Assembly: GCA_010909165.1 (NCBI GenBank)
Contig: MU008209.1
Span: 248,001-312,000, forward strand
From: Anthoceros angustus
Taxonomy: Eukaryota; Plantae; Anthocerotophyta
Length of the DNA stretch: 64,000 bases
Direction of reading: 5' to 3'
In this document: positions 746 to 64,000 of the stretch, one piece after another
How positions within the stretch are numbered: position 1 is the first letter of the stretch
Layout of the letters: every line of letters starts with the position of its first letter
Program-made: the position numbers and the translations under genes
The notes under the pieces: generated by a model
Told to the model about the DNA's origin: nothing
What the model saw: only the letters and a program-made list of their open reading frames with translations
The model's database searches: none

Positions 746-3700
746 TCACTTCGCCCTTTCTTGAGGCCTTTCTCGCCTGCGAATCCTTGGAGGTGAGTCA
801 TGAGACGCCTCATCTCCCTGGACACTGCGGTTGACATGGGCAGCTGAACTTGGAACCTCCAGCCCATCAAGCACACAGTTTTCATCCACCTTCCGGACCC
901 CTGCTCGCATTGCAGCAGTTGCCATCGCAGATGCCACATGACTTGCTGGAAACGCAAAGAAACTAGAGCTCCCAAACAATTTTGATCCCACTTCATTTTC
1001 AAACTCCCCAGAAGATTCTCTCGAGACAGCTACAGCATTTCCTTTCCTGTCATTGCCCCTTATAGACCTTGTGAGAGAGCACGATGCTGGTAACTCCCCG
1101 ACTGGAGAGATGTAACCCGAAGCATCCTGCATGGATCTAGAGGAACTCCCCGATGACCCAAATGATGGAGATTTTCCAAATCCTCCAGAGAATGATTGCC
1201 CTCTGAAGGAAGGACTTGAAACTCCAGAGAATGATTGCCCTCTCAAGGAAGGACTTGAAACTCCGTCTGCACCGTTCTCTGACTTCTTCGCTTGAAAGGT
1301 GAAACCCATCTGCCCCGAGAGGTTCAAAGGTTTCAAGCTTGGGAGATGGTCATCGGTAACCTGCTCCTTCTCCTTGCTGTTCTCCAAGAGTGGCTTTTCA
1401 CTGCCCTGCCTCTTCAACTCTTTCCTGCTGAGATTCTTAGACATCCTCTCACTGTTGGACCTCCTGCTTCTGGGCTGAGGGGTTACGAGCAGAAGGCGGG
1501 ACATGACATAAGCGAGCAGCTCCTCCCTGTGTGAGAAGGTGAAGTCCAGGTGTGCATACTCAAACTCCTCGTAAGAGGCCTGAACCCCACTTGCCTTCAA
1601 GGTGTGGTAGTGTTTCATGACCATGGACTTCGGAATCAGGCGGTCCTTCCTCCCTGCTACAACATCAACAGGGATATCTATCACACCATAGTTTGCACCA
1701 ATATCCAAAGGGTAGGGAGTGCCGTATGCCTCCATATTCGCAGCATCACTCCCAAAATCATACATGATAAACCGCTTGGTGCGCATCATCTGTGCCAGAT
1801 GGAGGGTCACATTGTAGGCTACACCTGGCATATCATCCATGTTGTAGTGAGACAGTCCAATTGCACCCACCCAATTTGAGCTATCACCTCCGACAAAGTA
1901 ACTCACAAAAATCTGCACCAATCCTCCTAATGCTGGATAATTCTGAAAATCTCTAGCTAGCTTGTTGAAAAGCATTCGGAAAAACTTGGTCGGGATATAA
2001 AAACCTGGGACAAACGGGCGCAATACAGGCTCTAGAATAGGAAGAGCGTATTGCAAAATTGTACAGGAAGGTGGCGCATTCTCATGAAAGCCTGCAGGGG
2101 ATAGGAGAATGAGTCTGGATAGACGATGTGGCTTCCCTTCTAAACGTCTTGTCACTACATACATCAATAAAGCAGCTCCACCAAGACTGTGAGCTACGGC
2201 ACACAGTTTATAAGGTTGATCCTCCTCAGCAGAACTGGCTGCAGCTTCCACCCTGTCAGAGTTTGTCTCCAGCTGTTGCAGTTCAGATTTCTTGATCTCG
2301 TGGATTCTGTTGATCATGGAAGGGATGTCAAACGTACCATGCTCATTGATGGAGTATCTCCAATATCTGCAAACATAGGAACGTCAATGATCATCTATGC
2401 CTCAATCCGGAACGACAAGTGCCGTCCTCAGCATATTCGGAGGAACAAGTGCAGAATCATACTGCTTTCTCACCTCTGCGGTGAAATGTGCTTATTCACG
2501 TGCTCCCTCGATGCCAGACCACGCAGGTTTCCGAGATATACATCATATCCTGCAAACCACCTCACCTTCCAGCCTAAAGTGAGAAGCAAGGCAACAATGG
2601 CGTGCTGTTTGCACAGAAGAAAACAGGTCAGCCTGATACCTTGGTCATAGGCCGCAAAAGCTTGTGAACCAACAACTCCATTCGAAACCCATCTACATGA
2701 GGGGAAAAGGATCATCACAAACCAGACTGAAGTGCAAACAGCAAAGCTTCCAGAGGGCTCTGCAGCATGCTTGAATCGCACGAACATGGAACCAAAAACA
2801 CATACCCCAACGACGAATCCAACAAACCATGTTGCAAATATAAAGCTTTCCGTGACTGCCGCCTGCAGCAAGAACTCGGAGTCAGCGTCCGCAATCCTGC
2901 TTCAGCAGGCTTTACATGTAAGAAAAACGCACTAAAACACTGCAGTCGTTCACAATATCAAAACTCGCCTCGGAATCCTCTCAAGCAGCAAGACATGTCC
3001 ATCAGGAGTTGTGACCCGCAGAGCTTCGTAAGGATACCTGAAAATCCAGCACGTTCCACACAAGATGAGAACAACCACGTCAAGACGAGGGCAAGGATGG
3101 AAACGGCGTCGGCAACGCACCCAAGGTTGGTGATGACGTCTTCACAAGTCCGAGCATCCGTGTTCAAGGACTGGTTCGATTGGTATCTTCCACTGGGAGC
3201 AGGATCCGCATCCCCCAGAGTAGCAGCAGGCACCAGGTCTCGCCCACCAGGATACTCGCTGTCCCCGAAAACAATCTTCCTCACGACCAGCTTCAGGGTT
3301 TCCAGCGGCGAGAATACAGGATAGAACATGACCCGCACCACATCGAAAACCTTCTCGATCGACAGCTCAATCAGCAGCTGCAGATCCTGCACCACAACAA
3401 ACCCATCAGACCCGGCGGCAGGGAGGAAAACGCCACAACCACAAAGACCCCCCAAGACACCAACCTCGATGACTCCTCGCCGCCGGTTGGGAGCATCGTG
3501 GCCCCCGAAATCCTTGATGCTGCTGTTGTGCCGGCTGAGGAAGTACATCTTGTTCAAACTCTGCGCGCTGCTGGACCGGCTGTGCATCCTGCTCCCAGCT
3601 CTGGACGGCCCCGTAACCCCAAACAGCCAGCGCAGCGGCCACGTGAGGAAGCGCAGCATGCAGCGCAGCCACCAGAAGAAGTGCACATTCTTGTCGTGCC

Positions 3701-44075: not shown

Positions 44076-44144
44076 GGATGAGAATCAATTCATGGAAGCT
44101 AGATTGTTATTCGCGTAGATGTCAGCTGCCAGTGGTTGCGAGCT

Positions 44145-46748
44145 ATGGCTGTCTGGAGCGTTGCAATTGAGACAGGCAAAGGGCAACTGGACCCGTTGTG
44201 GGCACGGTCCTCGTGGACCCAACAAAGTGGTGGGCTGCCAGCTGCCGGACGTCTAACTTCAAGAAACCAGGACTTGGCAAACAACGAACCTCCGATGTGC
44301 AGCACCTTTAGAAACTCACCCAGTCCAGTAGTATGTCGGGCTGGAGACAGAACCTCCATCGACCAAGAGCTTGATGCGCTGGATACGAAGATCGGTCGTC
44401 GCAGGCATTCAGGGTACGAAAGGAGTGTAACGGCTGAGACCGTGATCAAGTTATGTCGTCAAGGCCATCTCTCTGAGGCTGTTAACGCTTTGGAAGTTCT
44501 GGTAGAGACAGACTGTCGTGTCTCCAGGCCCCTCTTTTACACTGTGCTGAAGGAATGTGTGGTGAAGAAGGATGTTCGTCTAGGTAGCCGAGTCCATGCT
44601 TTCACGGCAAAGATGGGTTACGAGTCAGATACGTTCCTGTGCAATTACATTCTGCGAATGTATGCCTCTCATGGCAGGCTGCAAGACGCGGTGGATGTGT
44701 TTGAAGCCGTTGCAAAACCAGATGCCTTCATGTGGTCTTCCATAATTTTTGCACATGTTAAACACGGACAAGACAGGCAGGCCCTACAACTGTATAATCG
44801 GATGCGCAAGTCCAGTGTGAAGCCAGACGGCCATGTATTTGTGGCAGCCCTTCAGGCTTGTGCAAGGGGGCAAGACTTGAAAACTGGGCAGGAGCTACAT
44901 GCTGCTGTGTTAGCTTGTGGCGTTGAGCCGAATGTGTTTGTCTCTAGTTGCTTGGTGGACATGTATGCAAAGTGTGGCAGCTTAGAAGACGCTCAAAGAG
45001 TGTTTGACGCACTTGGCCAAAAGAATGTGGTCACGTGGACTGCTCTAATAGCAGGATATTACCAGCAGGGCAATGGGCAGGAAGCTCTTCGTCTCTTCAG
45101 GGAAATGGAAGCAGAAGGCATCGCTGTACCCAATTCGGTGACATTTGTGTGCCTCCTGCAGGCATGTGCAAGTGTGGGCACTCCAGCTTTGGAGATGGGG
45201 AAGCAGATTCATGTGCAGATCAGAGAACGAGGCCATCAAGATGATGTGTTTGTAGCCAACAGTTTGGTGAACATGTATGCAAAGTGTGGCAGCTTGGAGG
45301 ATGCTCAGGGAGTGTTTGACGGACTTGATCGGAAAGATGTGGTGACATGGAATGCCCTGATGGTAGGATATACCAAGCAGAGCATGGGCCATGAAGCCCT
45401 TCGTCTCTATCGAGCTATGCAGAAAGAAGGCTTGGTTGCACCCAATTGCCCGACATTCGCATGCCTCCTGCAGGCATGCGCAGGTGTGGGCACTTCAGCT
45501 TTGGAGGTGGGGAAGCAGCTTGACAAGCATATTAGAGAACAAGGACATCAAGATGATGTGGTTCTAGCCAACAGTTTGGTGAACATGTATGCTAAGTGTG
45601 GCAGCTTGGAAGACGCTCAGAGGGTGTTTGATGGACTGGATCAAAAGAACGTTGTGACGTGGAATGCCATGATAGCAGGATACTCTCAGCAGGGCATGGG
45701 GCAGGAAGCCCTTCGACTTTACATAGCCATGGAACAAGAGGGCATCACTGTACCTGATGCCGTGACATTTGTCTGCCTCCTTCAGGCATGTGCAAATGTG
45801 GCAGCTTTGCATCTGGGAAGGCAGCTGCATGCACAGATTGAAGAGCAAGGGCTTCAAGCTGATGTGTTTGTAGCCAGCAGTTTGGTGAACATGTATGGAA
45901 AATCTGGGAGCATGGTTGATGCACGACAGGTGTTCGATGAATTGCCTGAACGAGGCATTGTTTCCTGGAGTGCACTGATTGCAGGCTACTCCTGCCAGGG
46001 AGACAGTGAAGTGGTCTTCGACCTGGTGCAGAGAATGACAGAGGACGGCATTCAGCCAGACAGCATCACTTTCCTCAGCATACTAACGGTCTGCAGCCAC
46101 GCAAGTCTAGTGGACAAGGGGAGTGAGTACTTCCAGGCTATGAGCAGGAACTACGGAATCTCACCCACAGTAGAGCACTACACATGCATGGTGGATCTCC
46201 TGGGCCGTGCAGGCCTACTCAATGAGGCATTATCTGTGGTAAGAACAATGCCTGTCCCGCCCAATGCTGCTGTGTGGCACACTCTGCTGGGTGCTTGTAG
46301 AAAGTGGAGCAACGTCGAAGTAGGACGTCACGCTTTCGACCAAGCAGTGAAGCTAGACAATAGAGATGCTGCAGCATATGTGTTGATGTCCAACATATAC
46401 AGGAGTGCAGAGATGTGGGATCAGGCAGGCGAGATACGGTCGAGGAGGACAAGCATCAGGACATGGAAGCAGCGAGCTCAGAGCTGGTGGACAGACATGG
46501 CTGGACTGGTGCATAGTTTTCTGGCTGCGGATGAAAAGCATCCCAAGAATCAAGCCAGGCTGAAACACATGTTTTCCAAATTGAAGAATGAAGAATATGC
46601 AGACTCTTCACCGACAGACTTCTCTGTTGATATAAAGCAAAATGGTTTGCATGGGCACAGCGAGCAGCTGGCTATGTTACCTTCCCTCAACGACAAACCC
46701 CATATTCCTTGTGAAAGATACACCTTGAGACATTGTTTGATCTCTTGA
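44145..46748 (+). CDS. Intronless PLS-class PPR protein (~18 motifs, E1-E2, truncated DYW); probable RNA-editing factor
   Basis: Repeating P-L-S triplets (VVTWNA.., VTFVCLLQAC, LVNMYAKCGS), then P2-L2-S2 (PTVEHYTCMVDLLGRAG), E1, E2, AQSWWTD and HGHSEQLA, with no CxxC or DYW terminus. Confidence 0.93.
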   Translation: MAVWSVAIETGKGQLDPLWARSSWTQQSGGLPAAGRLTSRNQDLANNEPPMCSTFRNSPSPVVCRAGDRTSIDQELDALDTKIGRRRHSGYERSVTAETVIKLCRQGHLSEAVNALEVLVETDCRVSRPLFYTVLKECVVKKDVRLGSRVHAFTAKMGYESDTFLCNYILRMYASHGRLQDAVDVFEAVAKPDAFMWSSIIFAHVKHGQDRQALQLYNRMRKSSVKPDGHVFVAALQACARGQDLKTGQELHAAVLACGVEPNVFVSSCLVDMYAKCGSLEDAQRVFDALGQKNVVTWTALIAGYYQQGNGQEALRLFREMEAEGIAVPNSVTFVCLLQACASVGTPALEMGKQIHVQIRERGHQDDVFVANSLVNMYAKCGSLEDAQGVFDGLDRKDVVTWNALMVGYTKQSMGHEALRLYRAMQKEGLVAPNCPTFACLLQACAGVGTSALEVGKQLDKHIREQGHQDDVVLANSLVNMYAKCGSLEDAQRVFDGLDQKNVVTWNAMIAGYSQQGMGQEALRLYIAMEQEGITVPDAVTFVCLLQACANVAALHLGRQLHAQIEEQGLQADVFVASSLVNMYGKSGSMVDARQVFDELPERGIVSWSALIAGYSCQGDSEVVFDLVQRMTEDGIQPDSITFLSILTVCSHASLVDKGSEYFQAMSRNYGISPTVEHYTCMVDLLGRAGLLNEALSVVRTMPVPPNAAVWHTLLGACRKWSNVEVGRHAFDQAVKLDNRDAAAYVLMSNIYRSAEMWDQAGEIRSRRTSIRTWKQRAQSWWTDMAGLVHSFLAADEKHPKNQARLKHMFSKLKNEEYADSSPTDFSVDIKQNGLHGHSEQLAMLPSLNDKPHIPCERYTLRHCLIS

Positions 46749-50545: not shown

Positions 50546-51004
50546 CGTGGCACACATCAGAGACGCGGCTGCTGGGTTGTTCGCGGGAGCGACGAGCTTT
50601 TATATTATTATTACTACTGCTGCCGACGCTGTCGCATTCGGTCGGAGGGTGACTCGCAGAGCTCATCTTTGGATGCTCTTTTGGTGATCACTAGTAGTGC
50701 GTCACTCCCATAGATGATGCTATATACACGTCGCGAGCATTATTAACAACCGGCTGAGCTTTGTTGATTCATACAATTCCTCCGGCTGTAGCCGACTATT
50801 CCCTCTGCATGCGCGGCACGCACTTCGTACCTTTTGCAGGTCCGTCACATTGAGAGTGAGGCCAGGATGCAAATTATGGAGGCTTCCCATTTCCATGTGC
50901 ATCCCCAGACGATGCTCTGCATGTACACGAGAGAGATCATTGGCTCAAGCTGAAGACCCGGTGTTGCCGGGTGTGTTCTACCTACTGCGAATGTGCATGG
51001 AGTC

Positions 51005-54000
51005 TCAGAAAACATCACTGAAGGTTTGGGCAGCACTAGCAGGTGGCGGGGTTTGGGAGGCTTGGGCGATCTTGTCCCAGCCCAGGTCGAAGGTGTCGTC
51101 ACCGTGGGCACCATCATCTGCATGGGCACGGGCATCCAGATGGGAGGCGACGGGGGCCTCGAGGGACGGCGGATTCCTGCACCGGATGAGCGGCCAGTTG
51201 AAGCCCTGGAAGAAGGGGTGCTGCTTGATGTCGTTGGCGCCGCGGAAGGCCCCCAGGCGCCGCGCCGGGTCCCGGTGCAGCAGCGCGCCGATGAGCTGAC
51301 GCGCCGGGAGCGAGACGGGAATGCTAGCCGGAAAAGTGAGCTCCTGCTGCAGGACGTTGACGAAGGTGAGGTGACGGTTCCGGCCGCGGAAGGGAGTGCG
51401 GCCGTACAGCATCTCGTAGAGCAGGATGCCGAGCGCCCACCAGTCGACGGCGCTGGTGTGGCCCTCCCCATTGATCACCTCCGGCGCGATGTACTCCTCG
51501 GTGCCGACGAAGGAGTTGGAGGCGGCGCTGGGCTGTGCGCAGAAGACGGGCTGCTGCTGCTCGCGCCGCCGCTTGCGCCGCCGCATCGGGCCGACATGGC
51601 TCTGCAGGAGCTGCGGGCGCGAGGAGGTGAGGAAGGAGAGGTCGAAGTCGGTAAGCAGAATGTGGCCGTTGTCCTGGAGCAGCACGTTCTCGGGCTTGAG
51701 GTCCCGGTAGATGACGCCCATGTAGTGCAGATACTCCAGGGCGATCACCACCTCGGCGGCGTAGAACCGGGCCGCGTCCTCGCTGAAAATCTTACGCGGC
51801 TGCTCCTCCTGGAGCACAAATAGCTCCCCGCCGGGGCAGAAGTCCGTGATGAGGCACACGTGCGTGCGCGTCTGGAAGCTGGCGTAGAGCGTGGGCAGAA
51901 AGGGGTGGTCCACCATGGCCAGGATGCTGCGCTCCGCGCGCGCCCGGTGCACCTTGTTGCGCCGCACCATGGCGCCCTTGTCCATGGCCTTCATGGCGAA
52001 CACATGGCCCGTGCCCCGCAGCTCCACCAGGTACACGGACCCCGTGTCCCCGCGGCCCAGCGGCCTGAGCGGCCGGAAGTCCTTCAGGCCCAGCCCCTGC
52101 CCCTGCCCCCGCCGCTGCACCCTCCCGATGGCGTGCCACTGCGCGCTGTTGAGCTTGTGCGGCCGCGCAGTCACGGGCCCCGAGTGCGCCACCCACAGCG
52201 CGTCCGGGGTCTGGTCCGCGTCCGGCAGCTGCCGCGTCGCCCTGTCCACGGTCTTGGCCGTCGTCTTGTTGCTCTTCACCAGCAAATGCTGTGCTGCTGC
52301 TGCTCCTCCTCCTCCTGCTGCTGCTTCAACTTCCCCCTCCTGCTCTGCATCGACGGCGGCAGGGGCAGGGGCGAGGGCGGGAATCTTCTTCCTCGCCTTT
52401 GCAGACGAACCCCTGTCCTTGCTGGGAACATAGTCCGCCACCTTCTGCTGCACGCCGATGAAGTACTGTAGCGCCCCGCTCTCCGGGTCGCGCATGGCCT
52501 GCAGGTGGAACAGGTTCCAGAACGCCTGCCCGCCCTTGGTGTAGTTCACCATCTCCAGGGTCAGGTCACGGGCGTCGCGCACTGCGTCCCGGATCTTCTT
52601 CACGCTGGCCGGGTCCGTGTCCGGGCCCTGCAAGAAGCGGCAGTTCCGGCCCAGAACCTCCTCCCGGGTGTACTCCGTCAGGTCCAAGAAGCGGTCGGAG
52701 GCGAAGATGATGGGGTTGTCGTCAAGCCGGGGGTCCGTGATGACGAAGCTGTCGTCGATGCGCTCCAGCGTGGTGGCCAGATCCACTCCCCGCCGCGTCC
52801 GCTCCGGCAACCGGACGCGGTCGATCCTCCGTCGTCCTCCACCATAACCACCTCCAGCTCGGGGTACGCGGACTCCTGCGCAGCCGCCGCCACTGCCGCC
52901 GCCACGTCCTCCAGCAGCAGCGGCTTCCTCTCCTGCTCCGAGATCGCGGACCCGCTCGTCGCCAGCCCGCTGCTGCTGTTGCTCCCGCTCGACAACCCGG
53001 GCACCAGCTTCGTCCTCGGCTCAGACGCCAGCGACAGATTCGACATGGACACGAACCCGGGGCCGAGCAGCGGGGGCGGCTGCTCCAACACCTGCCTGGG
53101 CCGCGCCACGGCCGCCACCAAATCCCCCACCAGCCCCTTGGCCTTCTCCTCCTGCCGCGCGTCGTACCGGATGAGCGACTGCGGGAGCCCCTTGGGCCGC
53201 ACCGCGTCCGCCATCGCCCCCTCCGTGTGCTTGCTCACTTCCGCCTGCATCCCCACGAAATGCGTCGTCGCCCCGGCATCGTCCTTCACCGCCGTGATGG
53301 TCAGCAGGTTCCAGAAGGTGGACCCGTCCTTCTTGTAGTTGAGAATCCTGCCGCAGAACCTCCCGCTCCCGCCATCCCCCAGCGCGGCCCGAATCTGCTC
53401 CACCTGCCCCGGGTCCGTGTCCGGGCCCTGCAGGAAGCGGGGATTCGCTCCCAGCACCTCCTTCGTCCCGTACCCCGTCATGGCGAAGAACCCCGCGCTG
53501 GCGAAGATGATGGGGTAATCCGGCTTCCCGGCGTCGCACACCAAGAACGCGAGCGGGAACGACCCCAGCGCGTCCTTCACCTCCCGGCTCATCCCGCTAA
53601 CGCCATCGCTCCCCTCCGAGCTCCGCATCGCCTCCATCCACTCACGCGCCAAACTGCACGGCATGGACAGCGACGGGCCATTACCCCCGGGCCCGCCACC
53701 GCCAGGCACGGGCAGGGACAGCGACATGACGCGCGACATGGACGTACTCGTCTTCACGCCGGAGCTCCCGCTGCCTTCGTCGTTCGCCTCCTCCTCCCGC
53801 TGCAAGATGAGGTGCAGGGAATGGATGGCGTCCCGGTCCACCTCCTCCCACGCCGAGCTCCGCCCCTTGATGTACTCCGCGAACGCCAGGAAGGAAGAGC
53901 GCGGGTGAAGCCTGCTCCCGTCATCGCCTTCCTCCGCGCTGTGCCGCGCCCCGGCCCAGCTCCGCTCCCGGGGCTCCTGCGACCGGAACCAGAACACGAA

Positions 54001-55523
54001 GGAGCCGGCCGGCGAGATCCTGGCCGCGGCCATCCCGGCTACGGCGTCCCCGAGCGCGGCTGCTCCGGGGTACCCAGACTCCGTGAGGGAGTCGGACACG
54101 AAATCCACCACATCCTTGTCCTGCCGCAGCAGCCATCCCGCCATCTCCCGGATCTGCGCCTCAGTCGGCGTGGTGCCGAGCATCCAAATCCGCTTCCCGT
54201 AGTAGAGCGCGGCGCCGGAACAGTCCACCAGATCCATCACCGTCGGCGCCTGCACCACCACTCCCACCGGGAGCTCCCGCAGCAGCATGTCGCAGAGCAG
54301 CCCCTCGTTCCTCTGCACCCGCTCCTGCCGCACCTGCTCCGCGTAGTCCATCTCGCGGTTCAGCTGCGCCGCGAAGGCCTGCACCAGGGACTCGCAGGCC
54401 TTCCGGAGCGGGAAGGGGAGGGTGCGCGGAGTGGTGTGGTGGCACACCACCAGCCCCCACAGCCTCCGGCTCCCGCTCAGCTCCTCCTCCGCGTCGCGGG
54501 TCACCACCGCCAGGGCCAGCGATGCCACGGACCCCATGTTGGCCATGTACTGGGCGTGGCAGGCGTGCGGGGAGCGCAGGCTGGACCCGGCCAGACTGAT
54601 GGGCTGATGCAGCTCCCGGGACTGCACCACCCGTACCGGGGTGGAGACGCAGTCGGCGATCATCCGCACTCGCTCCTTCATGAACAGGAACCTGGACGCC
54701 TGGGGCACGTCCGTGGCCGGGTAGTGCAGCCCGATGTACGGCTCCAGGTCCGCGCGCAACCTCTCCGCCACCACCTCCCCGTGCTCGTCCTCGTGGAACT
54801 TGTACGCCATCACCCGATCGTACCCCGTGAGATCCCGCACCTCCTCCACCACCAGGTCCAGCAGCGTCCGCAGGTCTCCCCGCACCGGCAAGGCCTGCAC
54901 CCGCGCGATGGCCGCCCTCGCCGCGCCCGCCGACACGAACATGTCCGTGGCCTCCGCTGGCTCCAGATCCACCACCAGGCCCCCGATCTCGTCGTTCGCC
55001 CGCAGCATCGCGTACAAGGGAACCCCGCTCTTGCTGTTCACCGCCAGCGGATTCAGGATCCCCGGATCCTCCGCCTCCGCCGCCTTCTCCACCACCGCCA
55101 CGCTGCTCTCCGCCAGAAGCTCCCGCGCGTCCGTCCCGATCCCGACCTCCTGCACATTCTTCCCGCCCTTGAGCCCTAGCACTTCCGCCGCGTTCTCGCT
55201 GTACGCCATCACCCGGAAGCTCTCCTCCTCCACCGCCAGCATGCACCCGAACGACTGCGTCACTCCCCCGCGCTGCATCGCGCGGAGGTACGCCGTCACC
55301 GCCTCGCTCGGCAGCTCCACCCCTCCGCCTCCGCCCCCGCCAGAGCCGCCATCCCCGCTGCCTTGGGGTACCGGTTGGATCCCCCCTCGTACGCCGCGTG
55401 CAGTCTGGCATCCGCGCTCGTCTGCGCCACCCGCACCCCGTGCCGGGACTTGCTGCTGCTCGCAGCTCCTGCTCCGCCCGAGCCCGAGCCCGAGCTCGAG
55501 CTGGGCCGCGGAGAGCGCAACAT
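51005..55523 (-). CDS. NEO: Neochrome (phytochrome-phototropin chimera), intronless; ~1506 aa after restoring two 1-nt deletions
   Basis: NTE SSKSRHGVRVAQTSADARLH; PAS QRGG..QSFGC; GAF TGYDRVMAYKFH, DVPQASRFLF, PHACHAQYM; PHY PRSSF; LOV1 ..NPRFLQ..FWNLL..GMQ; LOV2 NCRFLQ; AGC kinase GDTGSV, RDLKPEN, DFD, SNSFVGTEEY. Pieces lie in three successive frames (ORFs 55296-55523, 52678-55320, 51005-52810). Confidence 0.95.
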
Positions 55524-55864
55524 CTTGTCTTGTTGTTCAAAACCTTATCCTCCTCGAGCTCCTCCCTCCGAATGCACAAACACAACTCCCTGCTGCAGAG
55601 AATGGAATGCCTCTGCTGCAAATCAGCGATCAAATCCTCCTCCTGCCAAATCTTGAGCGTGACACATCGAGCAACAGGAACATCTTCTGAGGAAGAAGAA
55701 GAAGAAGAAGAGACAGCAGTCGAAGCCAGCAAGAAGCAGCGGGAATGCAACAAATGGCGCTTTATAATGCAAGAGGAGCTGAGGAAGGCGGCCATAGCCA
55801 GGGCGGTGCGAGGAGCATGTGGCGAGCACTTATCTGCGCAGAAAGCGCGCCGCGTGCTACCTCA

Positions 55865-55878
55865 AATTAGGCCTAATT
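55865..55878. promoter_or_regulatory. 14-bp perfect palindrome in the neochrome/F-box divergent intergenic region
   Basis: AATTAGGCCTAATT. Confidence 0.4.
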
Positions 55879-56123
55879 AAAGGCCAAGCACATGAGCCAG
55901 CGGCGCCGCCATGAGCCCTTGCCAGAGGCAAGCGCGGGGACCCGATCCGCGGTACCGGAGATCTCGATCTCCCGCCTCACGCGTCCGCGCGGGTTTAATC
56001 CCCGCCGGCCCCGGCAGCTGAGCACCATTCGTGCACCAGATCTGCAGCTGCTCCTCCTCCTGGGGATGGCCGGCTGTCGCTGGCGGCTTCACTACATCCT
56101 GCAAAGTGCACAGAGCGGGCGTC

Positions 56124-57425
56124 ATGTACAGCAGCAAAGGAGAGCGAGAGCCCGAGGGCGAGGGCCAGGGCCAGGGCGAGTCCCTGTTCGTGTTCATGGC
56201 GGACGAGCTCGAGGGCGGGCAGCAGCAAGACCAGCAAGACAGCAGCCAGTGGATGGATCCGGAGCTGTGGAGCAGGCTGCCGGAGGATGTGATCGCCTTG
56301 GTGCTGATGAAGCTCCCCGTGCTGAGCCACTTCAGATTCATGTGCGTGTGCAGGAGGTGGCGCGTGATGCTCTCGGACACCGGCTTCGCCAAGCTCTGCT
56401 GCGCCGCGGTGGAGCAGCCGACGGCCTCGGGGCCGCCGTCCTGCCTGTGCGGGATGGCCTCCGGATCCAGCCCGCCTGCGGCTGAGATCAAGATCCCGGG
56501 GTCCAGCCTCCGGCCTCACCGATTCCACCGCTCCTCGCTCCCCGCGGATCCGGCCGACGCCGCGAGCCAGCTTGATCTCTGGGCCTCCGACCGGGGCCTG
56601 CTCTGCTTCAGCAAGCGGAAGCAGCCGTACGGCGAGGCGCATCTCTACATCTGCAATCCTGTGACCCGGAGCTGGAAGAAGCTGCCTCCCGCCAGATTCG
56701 ACCAGTTCGAGTCCCCGCACCGCGCCTTCTTGCAGGTCCTGGATCCCGGCCATGCTGCGGCTGCGGCTAAGTACGAGGTGGTGCTGCTGGCCAAGACGCT
56801 CGCCGGCGGATGCTGTGTCTTCGTCTACGCGGCCGGAGCTCGGCGATGGCGGAGGCTGGAGTGGGAGGAGATCTCGGTTCCTGCATCCGGCGCCTTCGAT
56901 CCCGTGCTCTGTAACGGCGTGCTGCATGTCCTCGGATGCTCTTCCGGATCCGATCCGTTCAAGCGCGCGCTCAGCTCCTTCTGCGTGCGCAGCAAGCGGG
57001 AGGTGGCCGTGCCGGCTCCTCCCGCGGCCCGGTGCCGGAAGCTGGTGGAGCACCACGGATGCCTCTTCATTGTCTCCTTCTTGGAGCCGTTCGCGGGCCT
57101 GTCGGTGTGGAAGCTGGAGGATGCGGATCCGGAGAAGAAGCTCGCAGCCGCCGTGTGGACGCACGTCTCCACCTGCAGTGTGCAGAAATTCGCGCAGCTC
57201 ACCGGCTCCTGCAAGCCGCCTCTGCTCGCCAAGGTCGGGGCTATAGGAGGATTCATCTGCCTCTGCATAGACAACAAAACCGGGAGCTCCGCGTTGCAGC
57301 ACACTCTGGCTTTGTGCACCCGGGACAACAGCTGGTGCGTATGGGACTTTGGAATTGCGGATCCCCGCCGTTCCAAGCTGCTCCCGTTTCAGCCAACACT
57401 TACGACTTCTGTGACAACGCCATAG
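56124..57425 (+). CDS. Intronless F-box protein with a C-terminal beta-propeller-like (FBA/kelch-like) region
   Basis: LWSRLPEDVIALVLMKLPVLSHFRFMCVCRRW F-box; DRGLLC, YICNPVTRSWKKLP, PVLCNGVLH. The start may instead be at 56196. Confidence 0.88.
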   Translation: MYSSKGEREPEGEGQGQGESLFVFMADELEGGQQQDQQDSSQWMDPELWSRLPEDVIALVLMKLPVLSHFRFMCVCRRWRVMLSDTGFAKLCCAAVEQPTASGPPSCLCGMASGSSPPAAEIKIPGSSLRPHRFHRSSLPADPADAASQLDLWASDRGLLCFSKRKQPYGEAHLYICNPVTRSWKKLPPARFDQFESPHRAFLQVLDPGHAAAAAKYEVVLLAKTLAGGCCVFVYAAGARRWRRLEWEEISVPASGAFDPVLCNGVLHVLGCSSGSDPFKRALSSFCVRSKREVAVPAPPAARCRKLVEHHGCLFIVSFLEPFAGLSVWKLEDADPEKKLAAAVWTHVSTCSVQKFAQLTGSCKPPLLAKVGAIGGFICLCIDNKTGSSALQHTLALCTRDNSWCVWDFGIADPRRSKLLPFQPTLTTSVTTP

Positions 57426-57549
57426 CTCATGAGCTCGAGCTCACAACAGAGACTTCTAAGACTTGCAATCTACATCCAAGACTAAGTGTCATCTAGAACA
57501 GCAAAGCCTTACAGTTTTCTCTTTGAGTAGCTTCTTCTCGTCTGTGACA

Positions 57550-62463: not shown

Positions 62464-64000
62464 CTAATTTGTCGACCAATCGGAATCGTAACCAAGACGT
62501 TGTGATTTACATTGAGAGCTACTACTACTTGAGGAGGAATTTTGTGTCTTCTCCCTCTGCACCACAGGACTTGGCCCCATAAATATGGCAGACAATTTCA
62601 CCTTTGGCGAGGATAATCTATCTTGTGTGCTTGGCGATGATGGCATGTTTTTTGGTGATGTTACATTGGATCCTCTTGGACTCATAGTTCCATCACTACG
62701 TTTGGAATTTATCCTCAATAAAATGTCTTGCTTTTTCCTGCTATCAAGCTCTTCTAGTTTGGCATTTGCTACAGCCAACATATTAAGCCTTGGTACTCTA
62801 CTTTTAGTGGATGATGATTGTGGAGTTTGTTGTTTTTGTTGATTTGGCAATATTTTCCTTTTCTCATATTTTGGTGATTTCTGCCCTTGATTAATCTGTA
62901 ATCTAACAGACTCAAACATGGACAGAAATTGTCTTAATGTCTTGAATATCTCAATTGTCTTTTCTTGCTTTGGAACTTCCCCGAAGAATAGGGCTATATT
63001 ATTAATTTTTTCAAGGACATTATGCAATAAAACCTCTAGCCCACAAATATTTTCATGAGTTTGCTCAGCAAACAAGGTCATTTTTTGAGTGAAGTTAATT
63101 TCAAAATCTGATTGATTTGTGCATTGTTTAATTTCTTCATTCACGGTGGTAAGACCTCGTTTGAGGTCATGTAACTTTTCTTGTACATCCCCTATATTTA
63201 TGCTGGATGCTTGCTTTACATCTTCAAAATCATGAGCTAATTTTCCAATCTGCATATAATGATCAATTTTAATCTATTGTTTTAATTTATTTTCTTACTC
63301 TATAAATAAATAACACCTAATGTGTCTCACCTCTGTGTCCTTTTTCAATAGCTCGGACACCACAAAGTGGAGAAGAGTAGTGTTGGTATTTTTCCCCTTT
63401 ATATCCATAAGCTTTAGTAAAGCATCTAATTTGAATCCACTTGCACATCCACGAAAGGATCCACCATTTAGATGGTTACCCACAACTAATACCATCTTCA
63501 AGATCTTCACAAACTTTTTGCTACTTTTTAACTCAATACATGATTTCTCCAATATAGTAAGATCGTATTTAATCTGTTTCATGAATATCACCATAATTGA
63601 TTATATTAATTTCAATATTAAAATAGATATCCCTAAACATAATATATCCAAGAAAATTACAGATAGAACCCTACTTGTTCAATGGTTCTATTACATTGTG
63701 TTTTAAACAACAATGCTATACTCTTATTTTTAAACCGTGGTATTTTCATCAACTCCATATAGTATCTAAAGAGCACGATTAAAGCAACAAGTCATAAAGC
63801 TATGTAGATCATGTTGAAAATTTACAGCCATCCTTTTGAAGCATAAAGTGTTAAAAATTAATTCCTTACTTCTCAATTTCCGAGAGCTGAGATACGTCAT
63901 CATTGTAATCTTTCAATAGTTTCACATCCTCTTCACTAGGCATAGTACGACTCATTAGCTGAAGTACCTCATCGGTAAGCACAAGTTCATCCAACTCCAA
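62464..64000 (-). CDS. Formin, C-terminal FH2 exons; gene continues beyond the window
   Basis: LKMVLVVGNHLNGGSFRGCASGFKLDALLKLMDIKG...TLLHFVV and FFGE..IEIFKTLRQFLSMF; upstream exon MPSEEDVKLLKDY. Confidence 0.88.

What the first reader, a model, noticed from the sequence alone, without database searches (positions are those of the whole stretch)
53440..53442. Neochrome LOV1 lacks the photoactive cysteine (GRNCRFLQ to GANPRFLQ)
Seen: the codon is CCC (Pro) where LOV2 has TGC (52640-52642). This needs two substitutions, so it is not an indel artefact. The flavin-contacting R, Q, N, N and Q residues are retained. Known: the Cys forms the FMN adduct, and natural Cys-less LOV domains, including Pro-substituted ones, have been reported to signal through flavin photoreduction. 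Inference: LOV1 here may be a dimerisation or redox module, or may signal via the semiquinone. That would be a different wiring from Adiantum neochrome.
Basis: partly seen in the sequence, partly recalled or inferred. Interest (0 to 1): 0.8.

Follow-up and report, generated by a model that had tools for sequence, protein, structure and literature searches.

The report
Hornwort neochrome LOV1 lacks photoactive cysteine
In this hornwort-type neochrome (a fused red-light and blue-light receptor), the first of the two blue-light (LOV) domains has proline where the light-reactive cysteine should be; the rest of that domain, the second LOV domain and the kinase look intact, so it is a real but modest natural variant, not a new kind of receptor.

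Summary
On the minus strand, 53442..53440 reads CCC (Pro) inside G-A-N-P-R-F-L-Q of LOV1. LOV2 has TGC at 52642..52640 (G-R-N-C-R-F-L-Q).

- **Not an artefact.** An independent public orthologue (P0001, 91-92% identical, uninterrupted) has the same Pro.
- **Lineage-specific.** All 13 other neochromes recovered (ferns, Nothoceros, Megaceros) keep Cys in LOV1. On both module trees the window and P0001 form a long-branched sister lineage to them, so Pro is derived.
- **LOV1 is not decaying.** It meets 9 of 9 published "conserved LOV residue" criteria. It keeps 44 of 48 columns that are invariant in other phototropin and neochrome LOV1s. The AlphaFold model is confident and matches solved LOV1 structures at about 1 Å.

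Best reading: LOV1 cannot form the adduct, probably still binds flavin, and serves as a structural or dimerising module. LOV2 remains the blue-light switch. Semiquinone or redox signalling is possible but has no support here.

Precedents lower the novelty:
- Five angiosperm phot1 proteins have Ser at this LOV1 site.
- Pro-substituted LOV-like domains recur in prokaryotes.
- A 2015 catalogue of Cys-less LOV proteins already lists one entry with neochrome architecture.

Caveats: the window gene has two 1-nt frame breaks, probably assembly errors.

The parts
51005..55523 (-). Whole neochrome gene, with no intron in the coding region. It runs from ATG at 55523 to the stop at 51007..51005 and would give about 1506 codons if the two 1-nt frame breaks are read through.
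   Evidence: ORFs; Pfam domains; co-linear tblastn match to P0001 in two frames without gaps.
53803..55290 (-). Phytochrome photosensory module: PAS_2, GAF and PHY. The bilin-binding Cys (TGC) is at 54561..54559.
   Evidence: Pfam PAS_2 2.4e-24, GAF 2.6e-18, PHY 5.3e-45. P-H-A-C-H motif located. Groups with other neochrome PHY modules.
53236..53550 (-). LOV1 core (A-beta to I-beta), a PAS/LOV fold.
   Evidence: Pfam PAS_9. PDB 2z6c/2z6d E=1e-46 to 1e-44. AlphaFold mean pLDDT 87.5 with 99 of 127 residues at 90 or above. Foldseek rmsd 0.8-1.0 Å to the LOV1 cores 2z6d_B, 8qi8 and 1n9l.
53440..53442 (-). CCC, a proline at the position of the flavin-adduct cysteine. It is residue 627 of ORF 52678..55320 and the first residue of the E-alpha helix in the model.
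   Evidence: codon; aligned to Cys of 2z6c; helix H47-50 begins at Pro47; same Pro in P0001.
53245..53451 (-). Span holding the retained flavin-pocket residues of LOV1: G44, N46, R48, F49, L50, Q51, R64, N81, N91 and Q112 of the 127-aa segment.
   Evidence: Alignments. Criteria from Yee et al.. Residue roles in CrPhotLOV1 from PMC11364019.
52448..52753 (-). LOV2 core, with the adduct cysteine intact (TGC at 52642..52640).
   Evidence: Pfam PAS_9 2.6e-16; motif; the 146-aa LOV2-containing piece is 93% identical to P0001.
51209..52069 (-). C-terminal Ser/Thr protein kinase domain.
   Evidence: Pfam Pkinase 1e-61; co-linear with P0001.
55320..55323 (-). Frame break 1, a run of four G. One more G would join the N-terminal exon-like frame (ATG 55523...) to the frame of ORF 52678..55320.
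   Evidence: Sequence; P0001 reads through this point.
52826..52830 (-). Frame break 2, between LOV1 and LOV2. One base is missing inside 'ggagg', in a Gly codon.
   Evidence: Sequence; P0001 reads D-D-G-R-I across this point.

Best explanation
The window carries an intronless land-plant (hornwort-type) neochrome gene: phytochrome PAS-GAF-PHY, then LOV1, LOV2 and a Ser/Thr kinase. In this lineage (the window plus the public orthologue P0001) the LOV1 adduct-forming Cys has been replaced by Pro through two nucleotide substitutions.

- **Shown:** the substitution is real, is shared by two diverged taxa, and is derived within neochromes. LOV1 keeps its fold signature and all other conserved flavin-pocket residues. 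LOV2, the bilin Cys and the kinase look intact.
- **From established LOV chemistry:** without the thiol, LOV1 cannot form the cysteinyl-C4a flavin adduct.
- **Inferred:** LOV1 survives as a still-constrained, probably flavin-binding PAS module. Its job is structural: dimerisation and/or modulation of LOV2 and the kinase. Blue light is sensed through LOV2 and red/far-red light through the phytochrome module. Loss of the LOV1 photocycle was tolerated because it is largely dispensable in this receptor family.
For: - Codon and motif.
- Same Pro in P0001, which is 91-92% identical and has an uninterrupted ORF.
- Thirteen other neochromes keep N-C-R-F-L-Q in LOV1.
- Trees: in the phototropin module, window+P0001 is sister to the Nothoceros/Megaceros+fern neochromes (97/94*) inside hornwort phototropins (99/97*). 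The PHY module groups with neochromes (84/86). Cys in the outgroups and the sister clade means Pro is derived.
- Constraint on LOV1: 91.9% identity to P0001, against 86-90% for the linkers. 44 of 48 columns invariant in the 21 other LOV1s are kept, and one of the four changes is the Cys itself. 9 of 9 Yee criteria residues are present.
- Structure: AlphaFold pLDDT is 90 or above for 99 of 127 residues, Pro is the first residue of helix E-alpha, and rmsd is about 1 Å to solved LOV1 cores.
- LOV2 primacy and the structural or dimerising role of LOV1: PMC4786545, PMC8086140.
- Recurrent natural loss of the LOV1 Cys but never the LOV2 Cys: 6 of 133 against 0 of 127.
Against: - No biochemical data exist for this protein, so flavin occupancy of a Pro-substituted plant LOV1 is untested. 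The only characterised Pro case, archaeal BAT-LOV*, bound flavin only modestly.
- LOV1 shows somewhat more change than other clades at otherwise invariant columns (4 against 0-1). It is also more diverged from hornwort phototropin LOV1 than other neochromes are (about 64% against 70-72%). Both fit some relaxation of constraint.
- The two-taxon comparison has little power, and no nucleotide orthologue was available for dN/dS.
- The window copy has two frame breaks that I could not check against reads.
Confidence: 0.6

Rival explanations
1. LOV1 still signals. [quoted passage not shown] This would give the neochrome a third, adduct-independent input.
For: All conserved pocket residues are retained, including the N5-contacting Gln. 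Cys-less VVD and YF1 signal through the semiquinone, and natural Pro-substituted BAT-LOV* binds flavin and can be reduced (PMC4682037). Pro at this site recurs in prokaryotic LOV-like domains.
Against: Wild-type BAT-LOV* photoreduces very inefficiently. Nothing here shows photoreduction or output coupling. LOV1 photochemistry is secondary even when Cys is present. The pocket may be conserved simply because flavin is needed for folding.
Confidence: 0.1
2. LOV1 is a flavin-free relic under relaxed selection, kept only as a spacer or PAS scaffold and slowly decaying.
For: More violations of otherwise invariant columns than in any other clade (4 against 0-1). Lower identity to phototropin LOV1 than other neochromes show. 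A long stem branch (1.14).
Against: 44 of 48 invariant columns and 9 of 9 pocket residues are kept after the loss. None of the 9 differences between the window and P0001 in LOV1 touches a pocket residue. LOV1 is better conserved than the flanking linkers. The long branch also affects LOV2 and the PHY module, so it is a property of the gene, not of LOV1.
Confidence: 0.15
3. The whole gene is a pseudogene in this genome, the two frameshifts being real, and the missing Cys is part of that decay.
For: Two 1-nt frame breaks relative to P0001, at 55323..55320 and 52830..52826.
Against: - The Pro is also present in P0001, whose ORF is uninterrupted, so it predates any inactivation.
- Both breaks are a single missing base in or next to a G run, in a gene with 62 G/C runs of 4 or more per 3.8 kb. 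That is the usual signature of long-read assembly error.
- Divergence from P0001 is domain-structured (GAF 98.9% down to linker 86%), not uniform.
- Earlier unchecked notes report frameshifts in other genes of this assembly.
Confidence: 0.12
4. The CCC codon is a sequencing or assembly error.
For: None beyond the general noisiness suggested by the frame breaks.
Against: Two adjacent substitutions would be needed. The independent sequence P0001 encodes the same Pro.
Confidence: 0.02

Closest known systems
Land-plant neochromes of other hornworts and ferns (Nothoceros P0128, Megaceros P0129, Adiantum capillus-veneris NEO1/PHY3 P0130)
   Same: Same architecture: PAS-GAF-PHY, LOV1, LOV2 and a Ser/Thr kinase, with an uninterrupted coding region. 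Both modules group with them on trees. They share the small G-S/T-G insertion before F-C-G in LOV1 and a non-Arg residue at position -2 of the motif.
   Different: Only 48-52% identical over the query, on a long sister branch. LOV1 has Pro where all 13 others have Cys. LOV2 keeps the phototropin-like G-R-N-C-R-F-L-Q-G-P-D-T-D.
Zygnematalean (Mougeotia-type) neochromes
   Same: A chimeric phytochrome-phototropin receptor in which one LOV domain has lost the adduct Cys (PMC4532919).
   Different: In the algae LOV2 lacks the Cys, and several flavin-contacting residues are also lost. Here it is LOV1, the pocket is intact, and LOV2 is canonical. The phototropin module has a separate origin.
Natural Cys-less LOV-like (LOV*) domains, e.g. 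archaeal BAT-LOV* with Pro (Yee et al. 2015, PMC4682037)
   Same: Pro replaces the adduct Cys while the other conserved LOV residues are retained. The window's LOV1 meets 9 of 9 listed criteria. [quoted passage not shown]
   Different: BAT is a prokaryotic transcription regulator. Flavin binding and reduction were measured there but not here. Whether their listed GI is this lineage's neochrome could not be checked.
Angiosperm phot1 proteins with Ser in place of the LOV1 Cys (P0024 Castanea, P0048 Hamamelis, P0062 Carpinus, P0116 Ipomoea, P0098)
   Same: Natural loss of the LOV1 adduct Cys with LOV2 intact, in the same receptor family.
   Different: A one-step Cys-to-Ser change in canonical phototropins, not a two-step Cys-to-Pro change in a neochrome.

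Membership tests
Neochrome (phytochrome-phototropin chimera) | N-terminal phytochrome photosensory module PAS-GAF-PHY | tested here: met
   Pfam PAS_2, GAF and PHY, all far above cut-off.
Neochrome (phytochrome-phototropin chimera) | Bilin-attachment Cys in the GAF domain | tested here: met
   P-H-A-C-H motif, TGC at 54561..54559. Chromophore binding itself was not tested.
Neochrome (phytochrome-phototropin chimera) | Complete phototropin part on the same polypeptide: LOV1, LOV2 and a C-terminal Ser/Thr kinase | tested here: met
   Two PAS_9 hits and Pkinase 1e-61. Co-linear with the 1350-aa P0001. In the window the polypeptide is continuous only if two 1-nt frame breaks are read through.
Neochrome (phytochrome-phototropin chimera) | Both modules group phylogenetically with known land-plant neochromes | tested here: met
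   Phototropin module 97/94*. PHY module 84/86, not starred and on a long branch.
Canonical photoactive LOV domain (applied to LOV1) | PAS/LOV fold | tested here: met
   AlphaFold model with mean pLDDT 87.5. Foldseek rmsd 0.8-1.0 Å to LOV1 cores.
Canonical photoactive LOV domain (applied to LOV1) | Conserved flavin-pocket residues (YtvA G59, N61, R63, F64, L65, Q66, N94, N104, Q123) | tested here: met
   9 of 9 present.
Canonical photoactive LOV domain (applied to LOV1) | Adduct-forming cysteine in the G-x-N-C-R-F-L-Q motif | tested here: not met
   CCC (Pro) at 53442..53440. LOV2 of the same gene meets it (TGC at 52642..52640).
Cys-less LOV-like (LOV*) class of Yee et al. 2015 | Lacks the Cys but has at least 9 of the other conserved residues | tested here: met
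Cys-less LOV-like (LOV*) class of Yee et al. 2015 | Binds flavin and responds to photoreduction or chemical reduction | not testable with these tools
   Needs purified protein. Only BAT-LOV*, VVD and YF1 variants were measured.

The most novel reading that the evidence does not exclude
The Pro-substituted LOV1 is a working flavin sensor that reports blue light or cellular redox state through a neutral semiquinone instead of a cysteinyl adduct. This hornwort neochrome would then integrate three chemically distinct inputs (bilin, flavin adduct, flavin radical) in one polypeptide. It would be the first plant example of natural adduct-independent LOV signalling.
Probability: 0.08. Interest if true: 0.7.

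Novelty: new member of a known kind. Interest (0 to 1): 0.35.

Why it matters
What LOV1 does in phototropin-type receptors is still an open question (PMC8086140). This is a natural, lineage-fixed LOV1 that has lost the adduct cysteine but kept its fold and flavin pocket, sitting next to an intact LOV2. It is a ready-made test of whether LOV1 works through its photochemistry or through its structure. It also sets hornwort neochromes beside algal neochromes, which lost the LOV2 Cys instead.

The practical value is modest. The sequence feature has been in public data since about 2014, similar LOV1 losses occur in angiosperm phot1, and laboratory Cys mutants already point the same way.

Tried and rejected
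- **Read-level check.** No reads were seen. 
- **Search for short LOV1 fragments of close relatives**. It found only distant phototropins and microbial LOV proteins, so P0001 remains the only close orthologue.
- **Degenerate DNA scan of metagenome contigs** for N-P-R-F-L-Q-G-P-D-T-D. It found 8 prokaryote-like contigs and no hornwort DNA.
- **Papers.** Li et al. 2014 (PNAS) and Kanegae et al. 2006 are not held. I could not check whether they comment on the hornwort LOV1 residue or on LOV1/LOV2 mutants of Adiantum NEO1.
- **dN/dS.** Not possible, because no nucleotide orthologue was available.
- **Rejected ideas.** A codon error (P0001 has the same Pro). An indel artefact (both flanks are in frame). 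The R-to-A change as part of the event (other neochromes also vary there).
- **Source organism.** I did not establish it. "Anthoceros-type hornwort" is an inference from the trees and from the published remark that the Anthoceros neochrome is divergent.

Full report
**What is there.** The minus strand between 55523 and 51005 encodes one long, intron-free receptor.
- ORF 52678..55320 (880 aa) carries Pfam PAS_2, GAF and PHY, followed by a PAS_9 (LOV) domain.
- ORF 51005..52810 (601 aa) carries a second PAS_9 and a protein kinase domain.
- A short upstream ORF (55296..55523) supplies the Ser-rich phytochrome N-terminus.

This is the neochrome architecture. The bilin-attachment Cys (P-H-A-C-H, 54561..54559) is present.

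**The observation.** On the minus strand, 53442..53440 is CCC within G-A-N-P-R-F-L-Q. LOV2 has TGC at 52642..52640 within G-R-N-C-R-F-L-Q. Against the solved Arabidopsis phot1 LOV1 structure (2z6c, E=2.2e-46), the Pro aligns with the adduct Cys. TGC to CCC needs two substitutions and the flanks stay in frame, so it is not an indel effect.

Independent support comes from P0001 instead.
- P0001 is a 1350-aa public neochrome, UniParc UPI00045ECABD.
- It is 91-92% identical to the window protein, is uninterrupted, and has the same G-A-N-P-R-F-L-Q in LOV1 and G-R-N-C-R-F-L-Q in LOV2.
- About 8% amino-acid divergence means it is a different taxon, so the Pro is a fixed lineage trait and not an error.

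**Distribution and polarity.**
- Thirteen other neochromes all keep N-C-R-F-L-Q in LOV1. They come from ferns, including Adiantum capillus-veneris, and from the hornworts Nothoceros and Megaceros.
- They are only 48-52% identical to the window protein.
- On a tree of the LOV1-LOV2 region, window+P0001 is sister to all of them (97/94*), and the whole neochrome clade sits inside hornwort phototropins (99/97*). The stem to window+P0001 is long, at 1.14 changes per column.
- The PHY module also groups with neochromes (84/86; stem 0.88). This matches the published remark that the Anthoceros neochrome is divergent (PMC4525182).
- Cys in the outgroups and in the sister clade makes Pro derived on this lineage's stem.
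- The A at position -2 of the motif is not special. Other neochrome LOV1s have G, A or C there.

**State of LOV1.**
- *Pocket residues.* All residues used by Yee et al. to define LOV-like domains other than the Cys are present, 9 of 9 (YtvA G59, N61, R63, F64, L65, Q66, N94, N104, Q123). They correspond to CrPhotLOV1 N56, R58, Q61, N89, N99 and Q120. The equivalent of R74, which is not among those nine, is also kept. The roles of R74, N89, N99 and Q120 in flavin contact are described in PMC11364019.
- *Invariant columns.* Of 48 LOV1 columns invariant in the 21 other phototropins and neochromes, the window and P0001 keep 44. The four changes are C to P, P to A, I to V and K to H. Other clades break 0-1 such columns. 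In LOV2 the window lineage breaks 2 of 52.
- *Identity to P0001 by domain.* GAF 98.9%, PHY 95.3%, PAS 93.8%, the LOV2-containing piece 93%, LOV1 91.9%, linkers 86-90%. None of the nine LOV1 differences touches a pocket residue.
- *Identity to hornwort phototropin LOV1.* About 64%, against 70-72% for other neochromes. LOV2 is shifted in the same direction, at about 73% against 77%.
- *Model.* The AlphaFold model is confident, with pLDDT of 90 or above for 99 of 127 residues. It has the canonical LOV secondary-structure order, and the Pro is the first residue of helix E-alpha, a position that tolerates Pro. It superposes on solved LOV1 cores at 0.8-1.0 Å.

LOV1 therefore remains under constraint, perhaps somewhat relaxed, and is not a decaying relic.

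**Mechanism.**
- Established LOV chemistry says the thiol is required for the C4a adduct, so LOV1 here cannot run the canonical photocycle.
- In phototropins, light sensing is primarily by LOV2 (PMC4786545).
- LOV1 is thought to raise sensitivity by physical interaction rather than by its own photosensitivity, and it is the dimerising domain (PMC8086140).
- In the 133 phototropin and neochrome sequences retrieved here, the LOV1 Cys is missing in six: P0001 with Pro, and five angiosperm phot1 with Ser. The LOV2 Cys is never missing (0 of 127).

The best reading is therefore an adduct-dead, probably flavin-binding LOV1 kept for a structural, dimerising or modulating role, with LOV2 as the blue-light switch (confidence about 0.6). 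The more exciting alternative, semiquinone or redox signalling, has precedent. Cys-less VVD and YF1 signal this way, and natural Pro-substituted BAT-LOV* binds flavin and can be reduced, though its photoreduction is very inefficient (PMC4682037). Nothing tested here supports it for this protein (about 0.1).

**Gene integrity.** Relative to P0001 the window has two frame breaks. One is in a run of four G at 55323..55320. The other is inside 'ggagg' at 52830..52826. Each is consistent with one missing base. Three points favour assembly error.
- The gene has GC3 of 0.93 and 62 G/C runs of 4 or more in 3.8 kb.
- Divergence from P0001 is structured by domain.
- Earlier unchecked notes report frameshifts elsewhere in this assembly.

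Recent pseudogenisation in this accession cannot be excluded without reads (about 0.12). Either way the Pro predates it, because P0001 is intact.

**Novelty.**
- The open literature I could search notes only that algal neochromes lack the LOV2 Cys (PMC4532919). I found no comment on a hornwort LOV1.
- The sequence has been public since about 2014.
[quoted passage not shown] Algal neochromes lack several flavin-contacting residues, so I infer that they would fail that filter. On that reasoning the entry is probably this lineage's neochrome, though I could not resolve the GI.
- Pro at this site also recurs in prokaryotic LOV-like domains: eight metagenome contigs, plus P0265 and P0266.

I therefore class the finding as a new, or at least undiscussed, member of a known kind, of moderate interest.

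**Limits.**
- No reads were seen.
- No nucleotide orthologue was available for dN/dS.
- Li et al. 2014 and Kanegae et al. 2006 were not readable.
- The organism was not identified beyond "hornwort-type, probably the Anthoceros lineage", which is an inference.

Noticed in passing
window 55320-55323 and 52826-52830 (minus strand): The neochrome gene has two 1-nt frame breaks relative to the intact orthologue P0001. Each is a missing base in or beside a G run. This is probably assembly error but was not checked against reads.
   Followed up: partly
window 51000-57500: The neochrome gene is a sharp GC island: 67-69% GC and GC3 0.93, against about 47-50% GC in the flanks. The PPR gene 5 kb away has GC3 0.52 and the neighbouring F-box gene 0.83.
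   Followed up: partly
P0024, P0048, P0062, P0098, P0116 (proteins): Five angiosperm phot1 proteins (Castanea, Hamamelis, Carpinus, Ipomoea and one unnamed) read G-R-N-S-R-F-L-Q in LOV1. This is a natural Cys-to-Ser loss of the LOV1 adduct site with LOV2 intact. I found no paper that discusses it.
   Followed up: partly
L001-L008 (metagenome contigs); P0265, P0266: Prokaryote-like LOV domains with Pro at the adduct position (G-R/Q/K-N-P-R-F-L-Q-G-P-D-T-D) on eight metagenome contigs, several of which look haloarchaeal/BAT-like. Two 215-aa metagenome proteins have G-K-N-P-R-F-L-K.
   Followed up: no
window 53236-53550 (LOV1): Besides Cys to Pro, the window and P0001 change three other columns that are invariant in 21 other LOV1s. 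Two are P to A and I to V in the H-beta/I-beta loop region. The third is K to H just before F-V-G-M-Q. Their meaning is unknown.
   Followed up: no
window 53350-53380 (LOV1): LOV1 carries a two-residue G-S-G-type insertion before F-C-G. The same insertion is seen in fern, Nothoceros and Megaceros neochromes but not in phototropins, so it is a likely shared neochrome marker.
   Followed up: partly
window 44136-46748 (+), 56031-57425 (+), 62464-63255 (-), 746-2317 (-): Neighbouring genes: an 870-aa PLS-type PPR protein with an E motif; an F-box plus KIB1-4-like beta-propeller protein lying head to head with the neochrome gene (on the opposite strand, upstream of its start); an FH2 (formin) fragment; and a weak alpha/beta-hydrolase hit.
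   Followed up: no
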